Assembly (NCBI RefSeq): GCF_006345805.1
Contig: NW_021835569.1
Span: 1 to 33,120 of the forward strand
Direction: 5' to 3'
DNA from: Octopus sinensis
Lineage: Eukaryota
DNA: 33,120 nt
The position numbers and the translations under genes were made by a program. Below are positions 23,821 to 33,120 of the stretch, one piece after another. The stretch's first letter is position 1. Every line of letters starts with the position of its first letter. The notes beneath the pieces are model-generated. The model searched no databases. It had not been told where the DNA came from and saw nothing but the letters and a program-made list of their open reading frames with translations.

Positions 23821-23975
23821 CCGTCACTTAGCGGTTCGGCAAAAGAGACCGATAGAATAAGTACTGGGCTTACACAGAATAAGTCCCGCGGTCGATTTGC
23901 TCGACTAAAGGCGGTGCTCCAGTATGGCCGCAGTCAAATGACTGAAACAAGTAAAAGAGTAAAGAGTAAAGAGTA
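23821..23975 (+). mobile_element. SINE family A 3' part (plus strand), inverted relative to 23325..23480
   Basis: ccgtcacttagcggttcggc...gactgaaacaagtaaaag. Confidence 0.9.
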
Positions 23976-24180
23976 ATATATACATAAAAGCTTGTATTCT
24001 CATGCTGGCCACTTGATATGATCGGTTTTTTAAATAACGATCTTATCTTTATTTATATAAATTTATATATTTACTTCGTCATTATATTCACTGCGGTGGT
24101 ATTTTGGCCATATCGCACGAGAAGTTTAGACGGACAATCATATATGTGTGTATACGTGCGTATATGTAAATATTCGCATG

Positions 24181-24218
<38 letters not shown>

Positions 24219-24365
24219 CATCCTAGAATCTTCTACATTCAACCATTTTTGACGCCACTGCTTATAATGGAATATTTTAAAGAAACACTCATTATCGCTA
24301 TGGGCTCCGTGTGGGCAGTCATCTAAAAGTTTTTGTGCATCTTGATGCTGACATAAGTTCCTTAC

Positions 24366-24448
24366 TTTTCCTGATGAGAAGGCGCCATAATGCACCCCTT
24401 ATTCCTTCGAAATTAGTAATATGCAGCCTTCGAAACATATGTCGAAAA
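24366..24448 (+). ncRNA. Type I hammerhead ribozyme with fully canonical core
   Basis: UUUUC CUGAUGA GAAGGC (42-nt loop) GCCUUC GAAA CAUAUG UC GAAAA: helix I 5 bp, helix II 6 bp, palindromic helix III, GUC cleavage triplet (predicted cut after 24443). Confidence 0.7.
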
Positions 24449-24501
24449 TAAAATAAAGGAATTTTGTTGATTTGTCGTTCAACTCCATTCTTTCATTTAT
24501 T

Positions 24502-24582
<81 letters not shown>

Positions 24583-24854
24583 TGTAATTATGTGCTATCT
24601 GTGTATATCCCACTGAAGAGGTGGAGTATATTCTTATGCAAAGACAGAAATCTAGATCAGGGATTATCCAATAATTTTTGGCTAGTTTATTTCTCCCTTT
24701 GTCTTTTCTTCTGGTGCTGGATGAATACATAAAGTGGTTTTAGAGTCAAGTTTTGACTGCTATCTCTAGCATGGTGGTATCTTTTAGATTCCTTTAATTA
24801 TAATTTTAATAATAATTATTACCAACATGGTTTTTATTCCCATGCTGGCCACTT

Positions 24855-24886
24855 GATAAGATCGATATTTAAATATCGATCTTATC
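24855..24886. repeat. Perfect 32-bp palindrome gataagatcgatattt|aaatatcgatcttatc
   Basis: Direct reading; a degenerate copy lies near 24015..24047. Confidence 0.9.
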
Positions 24887-24910
24887 CCTATTTATATAAA
24901 TTTATACATA

Positions 24911-24958
<48 letters not shown>

Positions 24959-24990
24959 TTTTTTTTTTTTTTTTCATGTTTTTCTTTTTT

Positions 24991-25667
24991 ATTCCCTTCG
25001 AAATTTTATCCCTATTAATGATTTGGAATTTAACTGTTCTCTTTAGCGTGCAAGGAGTCCTGTGATGGATGCCTCTTATTTGTTTAAATGTACACTGTAT
25101 TTATATGAATAATATATAGTCTATTGACTAAACTTTTACACGCTAGGCTACTGGTAATGGAAATTTCTAACATTTCTGATTACCCTCTGATATCATTAAT
25201 TATTGATAATATTTTCTAGATAATTTTTGAATTGAAAAGCCGGCATTTTATTTACAACCGACAAGGAGCTGTGCTTGCGCAGTAGATTTGAAAAAATTAG
25301 AATGTATAAGCACGGGGCATATACTAGATTGTCTCCTGTATATATATTTAATCTAAGGTGTACCTGCTGAAGAATACTTCGCCTAGCAAATTATTTTATT
25401 TGCTAAGAGAAGTCTGAAACCATTGGCCCAGAACTTAGATGGTAAATGTTTTTACTTTTCATTCCCTTCGAAATTTTATCCCTACTCTTGGTTTGGAATT
25501 TAACTGTTCTCTCTGGCGTGCAAAGAGCCCTATGATGGATGCCTCTTATGTGTTTAAATGTACACTGTATTTATATGAATAATATATATTCTATTTACTA
25601 AATTCTTACACACTAGGCTACTGGTAATAGAAATTTCTAACATTTCTCATTACCCTTGATATCATTA
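24991..25667 (+). repeat. About 208-bp direct repeats (24991..25198 and 25461..25667) around a degenerate hammerhead (pLTR-like partial tandem)
   Basis: attcccttcgaaattttatcccta anchors are 470 bp apart. Confidence 0.85.
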
Positions 25668-25686
25668 TTATATATATATATATATA

Positions 25687-26926
25687 CAGGGTTTGGACAA
25701 AATAAAGGAAACACCTAGCATTATAGCATCATAATTTTGAAATATCTATAAAACCGTTAAAAGCTTGTTTATTTTTGCTTTTTGATTTATTATTAGTATT
25801 GCTAAACTTACAGTTTTTTTTTCAGATATCATCAGAAAAAGGTAATAAAGTTCATTAAAATCACGGCTGTATCGGACTTTCAAAGAGATCAAATTGTTGG
25901 TGCTCGTATGGCAGTCGCTAGCGTGACGAAAACAGCTGAAATGTTTGGTGTATCAAGAAGTACTGTTTCGAAAGTAATGACAGCCTTTGGGAAAGAGGGA
26001 CAAACCTTCTCGTCGAAACAAAACTCTAGAAGAAAACCAAAACTTTTAGATAGGAACTGTCAGATCTTACTCGAATTGTTAGAAAGGATCACAAAAGTGC
26101 AGCTCCCAAAATTACTGCAGAATTTAATGACCACCTCGAGAACCGAGTTTCCACACAAAATTGTTCGCCGGGAGCTGCACAAAGCCGGATTTCTTAGGAG
26201 GGCTGCAACCAGAAAGCCACTACTTTCAAAATCAAACGTTGCAAAGCTTTTAGAGTGGAGTAAAAACCTACAGAATTGGTCCCTAGAGCAGTGGAAGAAT
26301 GTTATTCTCTCGGACGAGTCATCCTTTACCTTTTTCCGGCCACCGGCCGAGTATACATGTGGAGACAGCCAAATGAAGCATTTGACCCAGACTGCCTTCT
26401 TCCCACTGTTAAACATGGAGTAGGATCTGTAATGATCAGGGGTGTGCTATATCTTGGAAATCCGCCGGCCCAATGGTTTCCCTTCGTGGTAGAATTAATA
26501 GTCAAGGCTATTTAAGCATTTTATCTGATCAAATTCATCCTATGTTTGCGGAACTGTTTCCGGAGGGAAACGTTATCTTTCAGGATGATAATGCATCAAT
26601 TCACACAGCTGAATGGCACGAAGAACATTCTTGTGAAGTTGACCATCTTATCTGGCCACCACAGTCCCCAGATCTCAATATTTTTGAACATTTACGGTGC
26701 ACGTTAGAAAAACAAGTAAGGAGTCGATACCCTCCACCATCATCACTACAAGAACAGGAGGCTGTTTTAGCTGAAGAATGGACAAAAATCCTTTGGAAAC
26801 AATTCAAACTTTGTACGAGTCCATATCTCGTAGAATTTAAGCTGTAATTACTGCCAAATGTGGTCCTACCTCATATTAAAATAAATTTGAAATTTAAAAT
26901 ATTTCCATTATTTTGTCCAACCCCTC
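25687..26926 (+). mobile_element. Full-length (1240 bp) Tc1/mariner DNA transposon with frameshifted transposase pseudogene (about 25860..26880)
   Basis: TA flanks; 25-bp TIRs cagggtttggacaaaataaaggaaa / tttccattattttgtccaacccctc (22/25). HTH region, GRKP-like RRKPKL, SDES, PTVKHG, QDDN and SPDLNIFE. Confidence 0.92.
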
Positions 26927-27476
26927 TATATATAATTGAACAACGCAATCAATACATCAGTTTAACTACAGCGCTATCTTCAGCTACACAAAATATGGAA
27001 TTTCAACAGGTAAGATGCATTAAAATAATTTTTCTGAACTATTCTAACAGAACAAGAAGATGAAATAAATTCATATTCTCAGTATTGTAGCAAGAATGGC
27101 TAAGAAAACAGACTACAGTTTCTTAGAATAGCATGGAACATAGTGGGGTCATAGGGGTTGTAATTCATATCCAGTTTTATTTCTCTTTTTATCATCTACT
27201 CAAATCTGAGACCAGAAGACTGTATATTAAGAATAAAGAGCAAAAATGAGTTGACAGTTTATGGCTAATAATTGGTCATAAATATTGTCATGGGTATCCC
27301 GTTACCCAGAAAAAAGGAACCAAAACTTTAGGTAACTTTAGAAAGGGTCAATTAGGTAGAAGTAACTGTCTATAAAAAAGAGGCAGGGTAGGTTGACATT
27401 AATTCATGATGTTATTACCGGTAAAAGGAGCAAAACGCTATGAAACTGAATTCGCTGTAATGAAATTAGGAAATAT

Positions 27477-27558
<82 letters not shown>

Positions 27559-27890
27559 CGAAGAACAACGCAAAAAAGCAACAAGGCGAGGACGTGGTAC
27601 ATCTAAAATATTAGCAGGTGTTCAGAGAAGGAAAGAAAGATGGTTTAATACGTTTCGAGCAGAGGAAATTCCAAACAGAGGAAGTCCGAAACACAGGGAA
27701 AAGTCCAATAGAAAAGGAAGACGGAGGGAAAAAAATTATATATATATATATATATATATTTAAGAAGGTGAATGAATTATCCTAGTATGGATAATTCGGT
27801 TAACCGATACCTGGGTAGCAAATTCACGTCAGAAAACACATTTTGTTAAAATCGCGTCGTTCCATTCTTTCATTCTATTACATTTATATT

Positions 27891-27939
<49 letters not shown>

Positions 27940-28025
27940 TTTGCGAAGGTGTCATTAATTCTATTACTATCCAATATAACTATTTTAAAAATGATAACAG
28001 AGTCAATGACACAGGCGATAGCAGG

Positions 28026-28074
<49 letters not shown>

Positions 28075-28077
<3 letters not shown>

Positions 28078-28260
28078 TAATCCAAACGGGAAAACAGAAA
28101 AAACAACAACACGTGGAACAATTACAGTATTATTATTATTAGGCGCTCAGGAAAATGGAAGAAGGAGGGTATGACGTTTCGAGCGGAGCTCTTCGTCGGA
28201 AACATAAGAGAAAGAAAGAAAGATCCCGAGACGGGAGGACAGAGGAAAAAAAATTGCAGG
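28075..28260 (-). repeat. Penelope pLTR-like repeat with hammerhead-like motif (28169..28205); related partial copy at 27560..27735
   Basis: Minus strand CCGACGA A GAGC ucc GCUC GAAA CG UC (U4 changed to C); helix I is weak. Confidence 0.5.
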
Positions 28261-28374
28261 TCGTCTTCACGAGGTCACATACTGAAAAGACGGAAGTAGT
28301 AAAAAAGGAGGAAAATGTTTTTTAAAAACAGGAGAGCTGAATCAATGAGGGAATGGTAAAAAAGGTGTTGCGAG

Positions 28375-30180
28375 ATGACGGTGTGTGTGTGTGAGTGTGC
28401 GTGTGTGTGTATGTGTGTGTGTGTGTATGGTGGACAATGGCTAGTAGCAAGCAGTAGTAGAATTAAAGGAGTGGTGTGGGGGTACCCTAGCAAGTCAGAA
28501 AGGCAGGTCAGAAGCAGGGAGGTATGTGTGTGTGCGTGTTTATGTATGTGTGAGTGTGTGCGTGCGTGTATGTGTGTGTATGGTGGACAATGGCTAGTAG
28601 CGGGCAGTAGTAGAATTAGAGGAGTGGTGTGGGGGTACCCTAGCAAGTCGGAAAGGCAGAACAGAAACAGGGAGGTATGTGTGTGTGCGTGTGTATGTAT
28701 GTGTGAGTGTGTGCGTGTGCGTGTGTGTATGTGTGTGTGAGGCGTGATAAAAAAACAGAAAATATGTATATGTTAGTGCGTGCGGGGCGGGAAAGGGTGG
28801 GGGCGTATGTAACGTGGAGTAGTAGTGTGTGTATATGTCCAGCGTGCGTAGTTGTGTGTGTGGCAAGTAAATTTGAAGTGTGTGTAAGTGTAATGTGTAT
28901 ATATATGCAAATGTGTGTGTGTGAGTGGGTGTGGGTATGTGTGTGCGTGTGTATACAAAAGGGGGGGTTAAGGGAAAAAGAAAAAGAACTGCAGCGAAGG
29001 GGGGGAGAGGAGGGGGAAGATGGAAGAGTGGTCCCGCGGCGACAGGCGTGGGAGAACCCAAAGACAACGCGCCGGCCCCAGATGCGGACAGGAGATCCGG
29101 TCGGTCAACCATGAGCGTGGTGCAAGCGTGCGTGTAGGCGTGTGTGAGTATGTATGTGTGTGGATGTGTGTGTGTATAGATGTATGTCCTTGTGTGTTGT
29201 GTGTGTGTGTATGAGTGGTATGTATGTACGTGTGTGTGTGTGGAAGTGTGTGTATGTGCATGTGTGTGCGAGTACATGCAGGGTGTGAGTGAGTGTGTTG
29301 TGTGTATGTGTGTGTGAGTGTGTAATGTCTGTGTGTAGGATGCATGTGTGTGTATGGGTGTATGTATGTGTTGTGTTGTATGTTTTGTGTACGTGCGTGT
29401 GTGTGTGTAGTGCATGTATGCGTATGCGTGTAGGTGTGTGCGCGTTGTGCGTGCATGCATGCGTGTGCGTATGTGTGTGTGTTGTGTGTGCATGTGTGTA
29501 GGTATATATGTATGTGCGTATATGTGTGTGTATGTGCGTACAGTGTGTTTGTGTATGCATGTGTGTGTATGTAGGTGTGTAGGCGTTTGTGTGTGTATAG
29601 TGTATGTATGTAAGTATGTATGGGTGTGTTCGTGTTGTATGGTGTGTATGCATGTGTGTGTATGTAGGTGTGTAGGCGTGTGTGGTGTGTGTGTGTACGT
29701 GTATGGTGCGTGTGGTGTATGTTGGTTGTGTGTGTGTGTGATTGTGAGTGTATGGGTGTTTGTCATGCATGTGTGTGCGCGTGCAGGCGAGTGTGTGTGT
29801 AAGTATGTGTGTGTGTATGTATGTGTGAGTGTGTATGTGTGTGTATGTCTGTGTGTATGTATGTACGTATAGGAGTATGTAAGGATGTGTGTGTTGTATG
29901 TGTGTGGGTGTATGTATGTATGTGTTGTGTTGTGGTGTGTGTGTGTTGTTGTAGTATATGTTTGTGTGCGTATGTATGTGTATGTGTGTGTGTGTGTGTT
30001 TATGTATGTGTTTATGTATGTGTGTAGGCGTATGTGTATAGGTGTATGCATGTATGGGTGTGTGTCTGTGAGTGTTTGTGTGTGTGTGTATGTATGTGTG
30101 TATGTATGAGTGAAGGTATGGCTGTGTAGGTGTGTGTGTGTGTATGAATGTAAGTGTGTGTGATATATATATATATATAT
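28375..30180. repeat. Long degenerate (TG)n-rich low-complexity tract containing a 153-bp tandem duplication (anchors 28426 and 28579)
   Basis: Direct reading. Confidence 0.9.
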
Positions 30181-30200
30181 AGGCGATATATATATATATA

Positions 30201-30609
30201 TAGGCGCAGGAGTGGCTGTGTGATAAGTAGCTTGCTAACCAACCACATGGTTCCGGGTTCAGTCCCACTGCGTGGCATCTTGGGCAAGTGTCTTCTGCTA
30301 TAGCCCCGGGCCGACCAATGCCTTGTGAGTGGATTGGTTAGACGGAAACTGAAAGAAGCCTGTCGTATATATGTGTATATATATGTATGTGTGTTTGTTT
30401 GTGTGTGTCTGTGTTTGTCCCCCTAGCATTGCTTGACAACCGATGCTGGTGTGTTTATGTCCCCGTTACTTAGCGGTTCGGCAAAAGAGACCGATAGCAT
30501 AAGTACTGGGCTTACAAAAAAAGAATAAGTCCCGGGGTCGAGTCGCTCGACTAAAGGCGGTGCTCCAGCATGGCCGGAGTCAAAGGACTGAAACAAGTAA
30601 AAGAGAGAG
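30201..30609 (+). mobile_element. SINE family A, full length
   Basis: Complete head, linker and tail. Confidence 0.9.
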
Positions 30610-30786
30610 TATATACATATTAGAAGAAATGAGGTACTCAGAAAATCGGATGGTTTATATTTACAGATATTTATTTGTATATTACATGTTTTTATATATC
30701 ATATAACTTAGATCATGTATTAGCGCTTTCTCCCATCTAGTGGGGTTTTCGAATCAAACTAAGTTTGATATATATATATATATATA

Positions 30787-32368
30787 AACCAACTTGCACC
30801 CCCTCTAGCCAATCTGTGGCGGAACTCATTGGATGCTGGATATATACCAGAAGACCTTCTATCCCAGTCTGTTGTCCCAGTTTTCAAAAAAGGAAACAAA
30901 TCGCTTGCCGTGAATTACCGTCCAATCTCACTCACCTCTCATATCATCAAGGTATTTGAGAGGGTGCTGAGATCGCGTATGACTCACTTCCTTGAGAGTC
31001 ATAATATGCTGAACCCCAACCAGCATGGATTCCGTAATGGGAGAGATTGCCTGACGCAGCTACTGCATCATTTTGATGACATTTTGAGAGCCTTGGGAGA
31101 GGGTTCCAACACTGATGTCATCTACCTTGATTTCAGCAAGGCCTTTGACAGGGTTGATCATAAGATCCTTCTGAGAAAGCTGTCCAATATTTGTGTGTGT
31201 CACTGGAAAGCTGCTGCAATGGATCAAGTGCTTCCTCTCTAACAGAACCCAACATGTTGTAGTCGAAGGAGTCAAATCCAGCCCAGCCAAAGTCAGCAGT
31301 GGTGCCCACAAGGCACTGTGTTGGGCCCACTTCTCTTCATCATCTACATAAATGATATTACTGACACCATCAAACACAGCAACATCAGAACCTTCGCTGA
31401 TGATTCCAAGCTCCAGAAGGTCATCAATGGCGTGGATGACCGAATAAACCTTCAGTCAGACCTACTGGCTGTTGTCCATGGGCGGAAAAGAATAACATGT
31501 TGCTAAATGAAGACAAATTCGAACTGATCCACTTTGGAAGGGAGGACGCTCTGAAACTCCCATACTCTCTTCCTTCTGGAGAAATTCTCATGGCATCCAC
31601 AACATCAGAGACCTGCGGCAGTGAGTGAGTAACAGTGGACAACAACATAAGCTGGGCTACACATTAGCAGCCAAAGTTGACATGGCCCGCAGAATGTGTT
31701 CCTGGATTCTCAGAACCTTCCAGTCGAGAGATTCCCACGCTATTATCCTTCTCTTCTCCACTTTTGCCCGACCCACCTTGAATACTGCTGTCCACTGTGG
31801 TCTCCCTACACAAAACAAAATATTATGAGAATTGAAGCTCCCCAAAGGTCAATCACAAAAAAGATAGATGGCATGTCAGACCTTGACTACTGGGGTAGAC
31901 TAGAGAAGCTGAAATTGTATTCACCCAACGACGCCGTGAACGCTACATTATCTGTATGATGTGGAAAATATTCCATCAGCACTGTCCGAATGATGTTGGC
32001 ATCACCTTCAAAATGCATCCAAGGCTTGGACCACGTGCCATCCGTCCACAACAAAAATCTAAATCGCATCACATAACGACAATATGGCACAACTATTTCA
32101 CCTCAATTGGACCCGCTCTCTTCAACATTACACCAGGACCACGTCAAAAAAGAAACTGACTACACAAAATTCAAGAAGTCTTTGGACAAATTCCTTCAAA
32201 CAGTACCGGACAAACCACCCACACCCGGATATGTCTCCGCAACAATAACTCTCTGCTCGAATGGGCCTTGGTGCCCAAATCCTGAACTGAAAGACTTCGC
32301 CAGGTGGTGCTATTAAGTTAGACATGGCCGGGCCAATACTGGCCAAAACCTTTCTAAGTTATTCTAAG

Positions 32369-32370
<2 letters not shown>
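30787..32370 (+). mobile_element. 5'-truncated CR1/L2-clade LINE with frameshifted reverse transcriptase
   Basis: YRPISLTS, NQHGFR, IYLDFSKAFDRVDH, (P)QGTVLGPLLFIIYIND and FADDSK motifs; tail with stem-loop and (ttctaagtta)n. Confidence 0.93.
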
Positions 32371-32415
<45 letters not shown>

Positions 32416-32643
32416 ATATAATATAATGATATATTTATGTATATGTATGTATGTATGTAGATGTTATGTATGTATGTATGTATGTGTCTAAATTTAGATG
32501 TATTGGAGTGGAGGAGTTGAGCTTCCATTGAAATGCTTCTAATGAAATTAAAAACAGGTGTCACGTGATTATCACACTAACCATGAAATTCCTTTGTTAG
32601 TTGCCTCACCTGCAACAGCTTCACTTGCACAACCACTGTGATC

Positions 32644-32650
32644 TATATAA
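32644..32650 (+). promoter_or_regulatory. Possible TATA box (TATATAA) upstream of paralogue exon 1
   Basis: Lies about 130 nt upstream of ATG 32780 in otherwise unique sequence; motif match only. Confidence 0.2.
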
Positions 32651-32779
32651 CCTGTCTGTCTGTCTGGTACCTGTTCATAGCTGCTAATAAATTAACTCCG
32701 TTACACCACGAATAATATAGTTAGACCCGAAGAACTCCTGCAAAGGTCTCTAACATTTATATTTTATTCCCGATCGAAT

Positions 32780-32900
32780 ATGATGTCTCGTGGTTACGTT
32801 GTTCTCGGTGAGCTGACATGGCGTTCTTCCCGTCTGCCTAGCCAACTGCTGATGTCGATGATGGTGATGACAGTGATGATGTTCTCTGGCACTTCGGCCG
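32780..32900 (+). CDS. Exon 1 of a second paralogue: MMSRGYVVLGELTWRSSRLPSQLLMSMMVMTVMMFSGTSA (signal peptide); gene continues beyond the window
   Basis: 40 codons + 1 nt, donor CCG|GTAAGT (phase 1). Start context gatcgaatATGATGTCTCGTGGTTAC versus gatcaaatATGTCACGTGGTTAC at 891-913. Ungapped alignment to exon 1 of gene 1 shares MSRGY, RS and LP. Confidence 0.65.
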
Positions 32901-32988
32901 GTAAGTAAAAAGACAAGAAATTTATTTTCTCAGGTCTTACCTTTCTTCCTCTCCTCCCGCTCTCCCATTCGCTATCTCTTCCTGCCCA

Positions 32989-32989
<1 letters not shown>

Positions 32990-33047
<58 letters not shown>

Positions 33048-33048
33048 T

Positions 33049-33115
<67 letters not shown>

Positions 33116-33120
33116 TCTCT
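32990..33120. repeat. (TC)n microsatellite
   Basis: Direct reading. Confidence 0.95.

What the first reader, a model, noticed from the sequence alone, without database searches (positions are those of the whole stretch)
32771..32906. Start of a second paralogue: evidence for a tandem Ig-receptor cluster
Seen: an exon homologous to exon 1 of gene 1, same strand, about 18.4 kb after its stop, with the same intron phase but substantial divergence. Established: cephalopods have tandemly expanded recognition families such as protocadherins. Inference: an array of diversified small two-Ig surface proteins could form an undescribed neural or immune recognition code. Only one exon of the paralogue is visible, so its architecture is assumed.
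Basis: partly seen in the sequence, partly recalled or inferred. Interest (0 to 1): 0.75.

Follow-up and report, generated by a model that had tools for sequence, protein, structure and literature searches.

The report
First exon of neighbouring two-Ig gene
The short stretch is the real first exon of a second, intact gene for a small two-Ig-domain, probably lipid-anchored surface protein, one member of a fast-evolving tandem gene family seen so far almost only in octopuses and whose function is still unknown.

Summary
Confirmed. The window is Octopus sinensis unplaced scaffold VCDQ01003523.1. Gene 1 (LOC118761863, 301 aa) has four exons, with every intron in phase 1.

At 32780-32900 lies a 40-codon ATG-to-GT exon, also phase 1. 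It is homologous to exon 1 of gene 1, and the homology extends about 90 nt upstream and about 35 nt into the intron (z = 15-20 against shuffles).

The scaffold ends 220 nt later. The sister species O. vulgaris is collinear there, and the same exon (0 of 121 nt different) is followed by three more:
- an Ig-1 exon
- an Ig-2 exon
- a hydrophobic C-terminal exon that looks like a GPI-anchor signal

O. sinensis carries these three exons intact on chromosome CM016876.1, just right of a 100-N gap. The composite is an open 288-aa frame that NCBI did not annotate.

With a 25-sequence alignment, AlphaFold gives two confident beta-sandwich domains. Foldseek matches them to butyrophilin ectodomains and Fab chains. 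Pfam Ig models stay below their cut-offs.

A profile search finds 40 representative proteins. All those looked up except one bivalve multi-Ig protein are from Octopus or Argonauta, and most lie on one chromosome. Orthologue dN/dS is 0.5-1.5.

The tandem two-Ig cluster is therefore real. A role as a "recognition code" is untested. This is a new, uncharacterised member of a known kind, of moderate interest.

The parts
32780..32900 (+). Coding part of exon 1 of the second paralogue (called D here). It encodes MMSRGYVVLGELTWRSSRLPSQLLMSMMVMTVMMFSGTSA plus one base, that is a conserved N-terminal leader followed by a Met-rich signal-peptide core. The intron is phase 1.
   Evidence: Searches give the sequence, donor and phase. 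It equals residues 1-40 of O. vulgaris CAI9737148.1. It shows 0 of 121 nt differences from O. vulgaris.
32690..32779 (+). 5' leader or proximal promoter region homologous to the stretch upstream of exon 1 in the other copies. The transcription start was not determined.
   Evidence: alignment A2 and local alignment.
32901..32960 (+). GTAAGT splice donor and the conserved beginning of intron 1.
   Evidence: blastn matched window 32847-32956 to O. bimaculoides copy B exon 1/intron 1 (72%, E = 2e-8).
32989..33120 (.). (TC)n microsatellite in which the scaffold ends. It is the probable cause of the assembly break inside intron 1 of D.
   Evidence: The O. vulgaris sequence continues through this point.
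899..1052 (+). Gene 1 (copy C, LOC118761863) exon 1: leader plus a poly-Thr/poly-Met signal peptide, phase 1.
6695..7027 (+). Gene 1 exon 2: Ig-like domain 1 (V-like, nine predicted strands).
12706..13029 (+). Gene 1 exon 3: Ig-like domain 2 (C-like, seven predicted strands).
14308..14402 (+). Gene 1 exon 4: short stalk, C-terminal hydrophobic tail (GPI-signal-like) and the stop codon.
   Evidence: The tail is predicted as a helix that runs to the last residue.

Best explanation
Window 32780-32900 is the first coding exon of a second, intact gene, D, in a head-to-tail array of small Ig-superfamily genes in Octopus sinensis. D has the same four-exon plan as gene 1:
- exon 1: N-terminal leader plus Met-rich signal peptide
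- exon 2: V-like Ig domain
- exon 3: C-like Ig domain
- exon 4: short stalk plus a hydrophobic tail that ends at the C-terminus

Every intron is in phase 1, so exons can be duplicated or shuffled without breaking the frame.

The scaffold breaks in a (TC)n repeat inside intron 1. The other three exons lie on chromosome CM016876.1, just right of a 100-N gap into which this scaffold fits.

The predicted product is 288 aa with four N-glycosylation motifs. It would enter the secretory pathway, lose its signal peptide, and most likely have its C-terminal tail exchanged for a GPI anchor. That would display two Ig domains on the outer face of the cell membrane.

What is shown: the exon structure, intact reading frames, synteny, Ig fold, family size and fast protein evolution. 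What is inferred: signal-peptide cleavage, GPI anchoring, cell-surface location, and any role in binding or recognition.
For: Identity of the exon. A profile search returned O. vulgaris CAI9737148.1, whose first 40 residues equal the window exon exactly.

Synteny. Window 21185-33119 is collinear with O. vulgaris locus L006 at 95-98% identity.

Downstream exons in O. vulgaris (L006).
- e2 14689-15018, e3 18626-18946 and e4 19595-19689, all with AG/GT boundaries in phase 1.
- e4 encodes DFNSAPSGILYSKWILAVNLILLLLAAAISC followed by a stop.

The same exons in O. sinensis.
- L008 53541-53870 (e2, 1 nt different), L007 487-807 (e3) and L007 about 1456-1550 (e4).
- The 100-N gap at L008 50988-51087 is followed directly by sequence matching D intron 1.
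- The composite reading frame is open for 288 aa.

Constraint. e1 plus e2 differ at 1 of 451 nt between the two species, against about 2.1% in flanking non-coding DNA (Poisson P = 8e-4).

Fold.
- AlphaFold2 on the 25-sequence alignment gave mean pLDDT 81, with both domains above 90 and all-beta.
- The listed Foldseek PDB hits (top 50, probability 1.00) are butyrophilin IgV-IgC ectodomains and antibody Fab chains.
- The 60 listed matches of a profile search against PDB sequences are all Ig proteins, best E = 8e-4.
- The profile also reaches a bivalve protein that passes the Pfam V-set, I-set, Ig_3, ig and C2-set_2 cut-offs.

Tree. D groups with O. vulgaris D (support 99) and then with the next gene E, LOC118766833 (support 100). 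Gene 1 sits in a separate A/B/C clade.
Against: - No transcript or protein evidence was available, so expression and the e1-to-e2 splice of D in O. sinensis are unproven.
- The four D exons lie on two different assembly records. Their linkage in O. sinensis rests on synteny with O. vulgaris.
- The only database model containing this exon, O. vulgaris P0008 (403 aa), does not use D's own exon 4. It runs on into the next gene.
- Pfam Ig models do not reach their curated cut-offs on any octopus member.
- No GPI or signal-peptide predictor could be run. The 20-30 residue conserved leader ahead of the hydrophobic core is unusual for a signal peptide.
- O. sinensis exon 3 has an odd cluster of 16 nonsynonymous differences from O. 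vulgaris. This could be an assembly error or the start of decay.
Confidence: 0.85

Rival explanations
1. The exon is one variable 5' cassette of a larger cluster-type transcription unit. Alternative first exons or cassettes would be spliced to shared downstream exons of a neighbouring copy, as in clustered protocadherins or UGT1A. Under this reading D is not a self-contained gene.
For: - O. vulgaris model P0008 joins D e1-e3 through a 24-nt mini-exon to E e3-e4.
- O. bimaculoides isoform X2 joins copy A e1-e3 to copy B e4.
- O. sinensis LOC118766832 X1 uses an exon 1 located 26 kb upstream of its other exons.
- All exons are phase 1-1, so such joins stay in frame.
- The D and E domain-2 exons are nearly identical (dS 0.06-0.08) while their domain-1 exons are old (dS about 1.0).
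Against: - D has its own intact exon 4, with a good acceptor and a stop codon, in both species.
- In O. bimaculoides, the own exon 4 of copy A is expected exactly inside an N gap (L003 13648-14425). The X2 join is therefore probably forced by the gap.
- Gene 1, A, B and E each have their own exon 4.
- The cross-copy models are automatic predictions, and I saw no read support for them.
Confidence: 0.1
2. The exon is an orphan relic: a partial duplicate or decaying pseudogene that no longer makes a protein.
For: - Only one exon is visible in the window.
- A 40-codon open frame has about a 15% chance of being open by accident.
- NCBI did not annotate a gene here.
- O. sinensis exon 3 carries a dense patch of amino-acid changes.
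Against: - All four exons are open, with canonical splice sites, in two species.
- e1 plus e2 are far more conserved between the species than the flanking DNA (1 of 451 nt against about 2.1%, P = 8e-4).
- The framework cysteines, the D-x-x-x-Y-x-C motif and the hydrophobic tail are all retained.
- The missing annotation is explained by the assembly gap.
Confidence: 0.04
3. The similarity is a chance match between low-complexity, ATG-rich sequences in repeat-rich DNA.
For: Both exons contain ATG-rich runs, and the scaffold is full of microsatellites.
Against: - The similarity persists with the repeat part removed (z = 16, with 0 of 824 background windows reaching it).
- The exon is identical to an annotated orthologous exon in O. 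vulgaris.
Confidence: 0.01

Closest known systems
Octopus paralogues of the same family: LOC118766831, LOC118766832 and LOC118766833 (O. sinensis), LOC106878948-LOC106878954 (O. bimaculoides), CAI9737148 and CAI9737157 (O. vulgaris)
   Same: They share the four-exon plan, the M(M)SRGY leader, a Met-rich signal peptide, two Ig-like domains with the same cysteine pattern and a hydrophobic C-terminal tail. They lie in the same chromosomal array.
   Different: D belongs to the 'MMSRGY' D/E subfamily. It is 94% identical to its O. vulgaris orthologue, 62% to E, and only about 30% to gene 1 across the Ig exons. In O. sinensis it is unannotated.
Butyrophilin / B7-type IgV-IgC ectodomains and antibody V-C chains
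   Same: These are the best structural matches to the AlphaFold model: an N-terminal V-like domain followed by a C-like domain. Profile-to-PDB sequence hits are to light chains and Fc-gamma receptor II.
   Different: Sequence identity is only 9-18%. There is no transmembrane segment plus B30.2 domain in the cluster members and no somatic rearrangement. Domain 1 carries three extra conserved cysteines (C119, C133, C140) and domain 2 one (C231).
Vertebrate CD2/SLAM family (for example CD48 and CD58), from general knowledge
   Same: Small V-plus-C2 two-Ig surface proteins, some of them GPI-anchored, encoded in a tandem cluster and evolving quickly.
   Different: No specific sequence relationship was found and none was tested directly. 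The resemblance is in architecture only, and the lineage is different.
Drosophila Dpr proteins (two-Ig, about 21 paralogues, partners of DIPs), from general knowledge; reviewed in PMC10084454
   Same: A multi-member family of small two-Ig surface proteins, many of them lipid-anchored.
   Different: Dprs are two I/V-set domains conserved across insects under purifying selection. No homology beyond superfamily level is shown here. No partner family, expression or binding is known for the octopus genes.
Octopus clustered protocadherins (Albertin et al. 2015, as cited in PMC10084454)
   Same: A lineage-specific tandem expansion of cell-surface adhesion-type genes in octopus.
   Different: The fold is different (cadherin repeats). 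Protocadherins are transmembrane proteins whose whole ectodomain is encoded in one large exon. The variable/constant organisation is not supported here.
Squid brain glycoprotein Sgp1 (Thy-1-like, GPI-anchored), from memory of Williams et al. 1988; the paper is cited in PMC2189447 and others
   Same: A small lipid-anchored cephalopod surface glycoprotein said to be Ig-related.
   Different: I could not retrieve its sequence, so no comparison was made. It remains only a lead.

Membership tests
Immunoglobulin superfamily (two-domain, V-like + C-like) | Two-sheet beta-sandwich fold in each domain | tested here: met
   The AlphaFold2 model of gene 1 with a 25-sequence alignment gave both domains pLDDT above 90, with nine and seven strands. 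The listed Foldseek PDB hits (top 50) are Ig proteins at probability 1.00. The structure of D was not predicted separately; D aligns throughout.
Immunoglobulin superfamily (two-domain, V-like + C-like) | Conserved B-strand and F-strand cysteines and the F-strand motif D-x-G/A-x-Y-x-C | tested here: met
   Domain 1 has C77...D142-x-x-x-Y146-x-C148, with D142 and Y146 invariant and C148 nearly invariant in the 25-sequence alignment. Domain 2 has C187...C254. D has NITC...DATSYRC and FNCTA...VISCTV.
Immunoglobulin superfamily (two-domain, V-like + C-like) | Significant match to curated Ig sequence models (Pfam ig, V-set, I-set, C2-set) | tested here: not met
   No octopus member reaches a Pfam gathering score. 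The best hit is 'ig' at E = 2.5e-4 in one member. There is indirect sequence support: the 60 listed PDB profile hits are all Ig (best E = 8e-4), and there is a transitive link through bivalve P0042, which passes five Pfam Ig models.
GPI-anchored surface proteins | N-terminal signal peptide, plus a C-terminal signal made of small omega-site residues, a short spacer and a hydrophobic stretch running to the C-terminus with no cytoplasmic tail | tested here: inconclusive
   By eye, D ends NSAPSG-ILYSK-WILAVNLILLLLAAAISC and gene 1 ends RSGSPISALPDTAWFSVSK-ISLLFLALASYS. The tail is a predicted helix ending at the last residue. Other family members instead have a transmembrane segment plus a basic cytoplasmic tail (P0011, P0023). 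No GPI predictor and no experiment were available.
Tandem gene array | Several homologous, same-strand, complete gene copies adjacent on one chromosome | tested here: met
   O. bimaculoides has copies A, B and C within 22 kb. O. sinensis has A, A', B, a further exon 1, then the gap, then D e2-e4 and E, with C and D e1 on the window. O. vulgaris has D and E. The locus numbers are consecutive.
Cluster with variable cassettes and shared constant exons (protocadherin/UGT1A type) | Copies lack their own 3' exons and splice to a common set | tested here: not met
   D, E, gene 1, and copies A and B of O. sinensis each have their own terminal exon. The one apparent exception lies in an assembly gap.
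Molluscan FREPs (Ig + fibrinogen immune lectins) | C-terminal fibrinogen-related domain | tested here: not met
   No fibrinogen domain appeared in any Pfam scan. The proteins end 30-40 residues after Ig domain 2.
Dpr/DIP-type neuronal recognition families | Neuron-subtype-specific expression and specific pairwise binding | not testable with these tools
   No expression or interaction data could be reached. No paper mentions these loci.

The most novel reading that the evidence does not exclude
The array, together with the second cluster on the same chromosome, may be an octopod-restricted, rapidly diversifying set of lipid-anchored two-Ig labels. Cells would express them combinatorially for neuronal wiring, self-recognition of arms and skin, or innate immune recognition. 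It would be an Ig-based counterpart to the octopus protocadherin expansion. Under this reading, the conserved signal and anchor exons flanking fast-evolving Ig exons reflect selection for diversity.
Probability: 0.15. Interest if true: 0.75.

Novelty: new member of a known kind. Interest (0 to 1): 0.4.

Why it matters
For annotation: O. sinensis has an intact gene that the reference annotation misses, because an assembly gap splits it. This 33-kb unplaced scaffold can now be placed on chromosome CM016876.1.

For biology: the work defines an uncharacterised family seen so far almost only in octopods. It has at least 40 clusters at 50% identity, and the members looked up lie mostly on one chromosome.
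- Members are small V-plus-C Ig-like surface proteins.
- The signal and anchor exons are better conserved than the Ig exons.
- Orthologue dN/dS is 0.5-1.5.
- This is the pattern seen in immune, reproductive and recognition gene families.

If expression proves to be cell-type-specific, the family would be a tractable Ig-based candidate for cell recognition in cephalopods, alongside the protocadherins. If expression is broad or restricted to the gut or skin, an immune or mucosal role becomes more likely. Either way the present result is a lead and does not demonstrate function.

Tried and rejected
- Walking downstream of the orthologous copy C in O. bimaculoides (L004, 9.6 kb beyond its exon 4) found no D-like exon, only short synteny up to window 16092. 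The O. bimaculoides counterpart of D was therefore not located. LOC106878948 is its nearest relative.
- The first AlphaFold run used only five close paralogues and was poor (pLDDT 49.7). I did not use it.
- I first read the 24-nt mini-exon of the O. vulgaris model (L006 21152-21175) as a decayed exon 4 of D. I rejected this because the stretch is homologous to DNA about 600 nt downstream of E's exon 4, and the true, intact D exon 4 lies at L006 19595-19689.
- I considered 'shared constant exons' and downgraded the idea to a rival explanation.
- Pfam scans gave no hit at curated cut-offs.
- Exact look-ups of isoforms P0005 and P0009 are not on record. I used the longer isoforms P0052 and P0045 instead.
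- Word-indexed homology searches with D and with the 25-sequence profile returned only 5 and 10 proteins. They are not a census; the exhaustive profile search is the better count.
- Literature searches by locus number and by topic found no description of the family.
- I could not decide whether the chromosome's exon 1 just left of the gap (L008 48918-49064) is an allele of gene 1's exon 1 or a further copy.

Full report
**What the window is.** Splicing four open stretches gives exons 899-1052, 6695-7027, 12706-13029 and 14308-14402. All have AG/GT boundaries and every intron is in phase 1. The result is a 301-aa protein. It is 100% identical to NCBI's 'uncharacterized protein LOC118761863 [Octopus sinensis]', whose only contig is 33,120 nt long. 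An exact look-up names the record as VCDQ01003523.1 of assembly GCA_006345805.1 and shows that this is the only gene called on it.

**The observation.** From ATG at 32780 to 32900 there are 40 codons plus one base, followed by GTAAGT, so the intron is phase 1. The peptide is MMSRGYVVLGELTWRSSRLPSQLLMSMMVMTVMMFSGTSA. It resembles gene 1's exon 1, MSRGYNAFVRGSRRSFSLPTN...MMMMMMMMIISVMILPCSSL.

The DNA similarity is far beyond chance:
- z = 20 for the exon with flanks.
- z = 16 after removing the ATG/ACG-rich part.
- None of 824 control windows from the same scaffold reaches the score.
- In a six-way alignment with exon-1 regions of other copies, the shared blocks include about 90 nt of leader, the start codon context, the exon end, the donor and the first ~35 nt of the intron.

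The stop of gene 1 (14400-14402) lies 18,378 nt upstream.

**What follows the exon.** The scaffold ends 220 nt later inside a (TC)n array. A profile of five close paralogues was searched against 1.84 billion representative proteins and returned 40 hits. One of them is O. vulgaris CAI9737148.1 (P0008). It begins with exactly the 40 residues of the window's exon and continues into two domains of the same family.

Its locus is L006, on OX597833.1. It is collinear with window 21185-33119 at 95-98% identity, apart from a 5-kb insertion in O. sinensis at 27243-32370. In L006 the exon is followed by:
- e2 at 14689-15018
- e3 at 18626-18946
- e4 at 19595-19689, encoding DFNSAPSGILYSKWILAVNLILLLLAAAISC and a stop

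All have canonical phase-1 boundaries.

The database model P0008 itself skips this exon 4. It uses a 24-nt mini-exon and then runs into exons 3-4 of the next gene, giving a 403-aa three-domain product. I regard that as a probable mis-merge, but I keep it as a rival explanation.

**The same gene in O. sinensis.** Three loci cover CM016876.1 from 6,389,322 to 6,504,266 almost continuously (L001, L008, L007). L008 has a 100-N gap at 50988-51087.
- The sequence immediately right of the gap matches O. vulgaris D intron 1 (L006 12292-12870, 96.9%).
- It is followed by D exon 2 (L008 53541-53870, 1 nt different from O. vulgaris), D exon 3 (L007 487-807) and D exon 4 (L007 about 1456-1550, inside a 181-nt stretch that is 99.4% identical).
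- Joined to the window's exon 1, they give an uninterrupted 288-aa frame with four N-x-S/T motifs.

The window therefore belongs in that gap, and the paralogue is intact but split by the assembly. That explains why NCBI has no model for it. The best O. sinensis protein match to the composite is the next gene, LOC118766833, at 62%.

Exons 1 and 2 together differ from O. vulgaris at 1 of 451 nt. Neighbouring non-coding DNA differs by about 2.1% (Poisson P = 8e-4). This argues against a decaying relic.

**The array.** In O. bimaculoides, three copies (A, B, C) lie within 22 kb, just downstream of a soluble guanylate cyclase gene. Copy C is unannotated and is the orthologue of gene 1.

In O. sinensis the order is:
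1. guanylate cyclase
2. A (LOC118766831)
3. an extra unannotated copy A'
4. B (LOC118766832)
5. a further exon 1
6. the gap, holding the window with C and D exon 1
7. D exons 2-4
8. E (LOC118766833)

A maximum-likelihood tree puts gene 1 in an A/B/C clade (support 100). It puts D with O. vulgaris D (99), then with E (100), then with O. bimaculoides LOC106878948, LOC106878952 and LOC106870302.

Other clades hold members with a transmembrane segment and a cytoplasmic tail (O. vulgaris, Argonauta hians). They also hold a second large cluster (LOC1068807xx and LOC1282502xx; CAI9737727-CAI9737738). The members whose contigs were looked up lie mostly on one chromosome in each of the three Octopus species.

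Every representative I looked up is from Octopus or Argonauta, except one unnamed Logan sequence and one bivalve multi-Ig protein (E = 4e-5). No squid, cuttlefish or Nautilus protein appeared. Annotated proteomes for those groups are sparse, however, so restriction to octopods is provisional.

**Are the domains Ig?** Pfam does not say so at its curated thresholds. Structure prediction does.
- With 25 diverse members, AlphaFold2 gives mean pLDDT 81 and above 90 across both domains. Domain 1 has nine strands and domain 2 has seven.
- Foldseek against the PDB returns butyrophilin BTN3A1/BTN2A1 ectodomains and Fab heavy and light chains at probability 1.00. The low whole-chain TM-scores are as expected when the inter-domain angle differs.
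- A sequence profile against PDB chains lists only Ig proteins among its 60 shown matches: light chains, Fc-gamma receptor II and CD22 (best E = 8e-4).
- The bivalve hit passes five Pfam Ig models.
- The canonical B- and F-strand cysteines and the D-x-x-x-Y-x-C motif are conserved. Domain 1 has three further conserved cysteines and domain 2 has one.

I conclude that this is a divergent V-like plus C-like pair.

**How it probably works.**
- Exon 1 supplies a Met-rich hydrophobic core preceded by a conserved, basic 20-25-residue leader.
- Exon 4 supplies small residues, a short spacer and a hydrophobic stretch that ends at the C-terminus with no cytoplasmic residues. That is the usual form of a GPI-attachment signal.
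- The product would therefore be a glycosylated, lipid-anchored two-Ig protein on the outer membrane leaflet.

This step is inferred from sequence form alone.

**Evolution.** Between O. sinensis and O. bimaculoides orthologues, Nei-Gojobori dN/dS per domain is 0.46-1.53 at dS of about 0.08-0.22. This is very high for proteins that keep open frames and framework residues.

Within the A/B/C group, some parts are well conserved: the leader, strands A, C, C', F and G of domain 1, strands B and F of domain 2, and the C-terminal tail. Others change most: the C'-C''-D-E region and the A-B loop of domain 1, and strands D, E and G of domain 2.

Conserved targeting exons flanking fast-changing mature exons is a pattern known from immune, venom and recognition families. 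It is compatible with diversifying selection, and also with relaxed constraint. The counts are small and gene conversion is evident: D and E share near-identical domain-2 exons (dS 0.06-0.08) while their domain-1 exons are old (dS about 1.0). I therefore make no claim of positive selection.

**Comparison with the known.**
- In architecture, the closest vertebrate analogues are V-C two-Ig surface proteins such as the CD2/SLAM group and butyrophilin/B7 ectodomains.
- The octopus protocadherin clusters are the local precedent for tandem expansion of surface proteins.
- Membership of the Ig superfamily is met by fold and motifs, but not by Pfam scores.
- GPI anchoring is inconclusive.
- A protocadherin-like variable/constant arrangement is not met.
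- FREP membership is not met.
- Dpr-like function cannot be tested here.
- I found no paper on these loci.

**Verdict.** The finding is correct as an observation, and its structural interpretation holds. The gene it points to is an unannotated but intact member of an already catalogued yet uncharacterised octopus Ig-like family. The functional speculation remains open. Interest is moderate, at 0.4.

Noticed in passing
window 962-1015 (gene 1 exon 1); same position in L001, L003 and L008 copies: The hydrophobic core of the signal peptide is a poly-Thr then poly-Met run (TTTTTTTTMMMMMMMM) encoded by an (ACG)n(ATG)n trinucleotide repeat. Its length differs between copies and between the window and the chromosome copy. 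Poly-Met tracts are rare in proteins.
   Followed up: partly
window 899-961 and 32780-32850: A conserved, basic 20-25-residue leader, M(M)SRGY...S..LP, precedes the signal-peptide core in two subfamilies. It is among the best-conserved parts of the proteins. Other family members start directly with a short signal peptide. Its role is unexplained.
   Followed up: partly
window 13465-14098 (intron 3 of gene 1); L003 30596-31135: A degenerate 12-nt-period repeat (CACATCAAACAT) fills intron 3 and is retained in O. bimaculoides. There a gene caller turned it into a 179-aa His/Lys/Ile-rich 'protein', almost certainly a false gene.
   Followed up: partly
L007 487-807 versus L006 18626-18946 (exon 3 of the paralogue): O. 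sinensis and O. vulgaris differ at 17 nt in this exon. Sixteen of these are nonsynonymous, packed into codons 165-209, while exons 1 and 2 differ at 1 of 451 nt. This could be gene conversion from an unseen donor, strong selection or a local assembly error. No donor was found in the loci held.
   Followed up: partly
L006 18626-18946 versus 35719-36039; L006 14689-15018 versus 32931-33317: The domain-2 exons of neighbouring genes D and E are nearly identical (dS 0.06-0.08), whereas their domain-1 exons are anciently diverged (dS about 1.0). This indicates exon-level homogenisation or recent exon copying inside the array.
   Followed up: partly
L008 48746-49097: A further A/B/C-type exon 1 lies on the chromosome 1.9 kb left of the 100-N gap. 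Its coding sequence is almost identical to the window's gene 1 exon 1 (one 6-nt indel and one substitution), but the intron start and upstream region differ. It may be an allele or an additional copy; this is unresolved.
   Followed up: partly
L008 10001-19558: An extra complete-looking copy (A'), with exon-1-, exon-2-, exon-3- and exon-4-like pieces, lies between LOC118766831 and LOC118766832. It has no model of its own. NCBI's LOC118766832 X1 borrows its exon 1, which makes a 36-kb gene model.
   Followed up: no
L006 21152-21175: The O. vulgaris model CAI9737148.1 uses a 24-nt mini-exon to fuse gene D to exons 3-4 of gene E, giving 403 aa and three domains. Several other O. vulgaris models of the family (726 and 1202 aa) look like similar concatenations of tandem copies.
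   Followed up: partly
window 25908-26847: Remnant of a Tc1/mariner-type transposase, with matches to the HTH_Tnp_Tc3_2 and DDE_3 models, split over two frames.
   Followed up: yes
window 27243-32370: A stretch of about 5 kb is present in O. sinensis but absent from the collinear O. vulgaris sequence. It consists of a long impure (GT)n array (29140-30162) and a non-LTR retrotransposon fragment with a reverse-transcriptase match (30829-31242), and it ends about 400 nt upstream of the paralogue's start codon.
   Followed up: partly
window 128-505, 2168-2575, 5293-5576, 9698-10119, 19855-20276, 23322-23740, 30188-30609: Seven copies, in both orientations, of a ~400-nt interspersed repeat that also occurs many times in the related loci. 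A separate 184-nt unit is repeated four times in tandem at 3529-4258.
   Followed up: no
L001 1-20282; L003 1-4336: The array begins right after a soluble guanylate cyclase gene (HNOB, HNOBA and Guanylate_cyc domains). In the O. sinensis annotation, copy A lies inside that gene's span.
   Followed up: no
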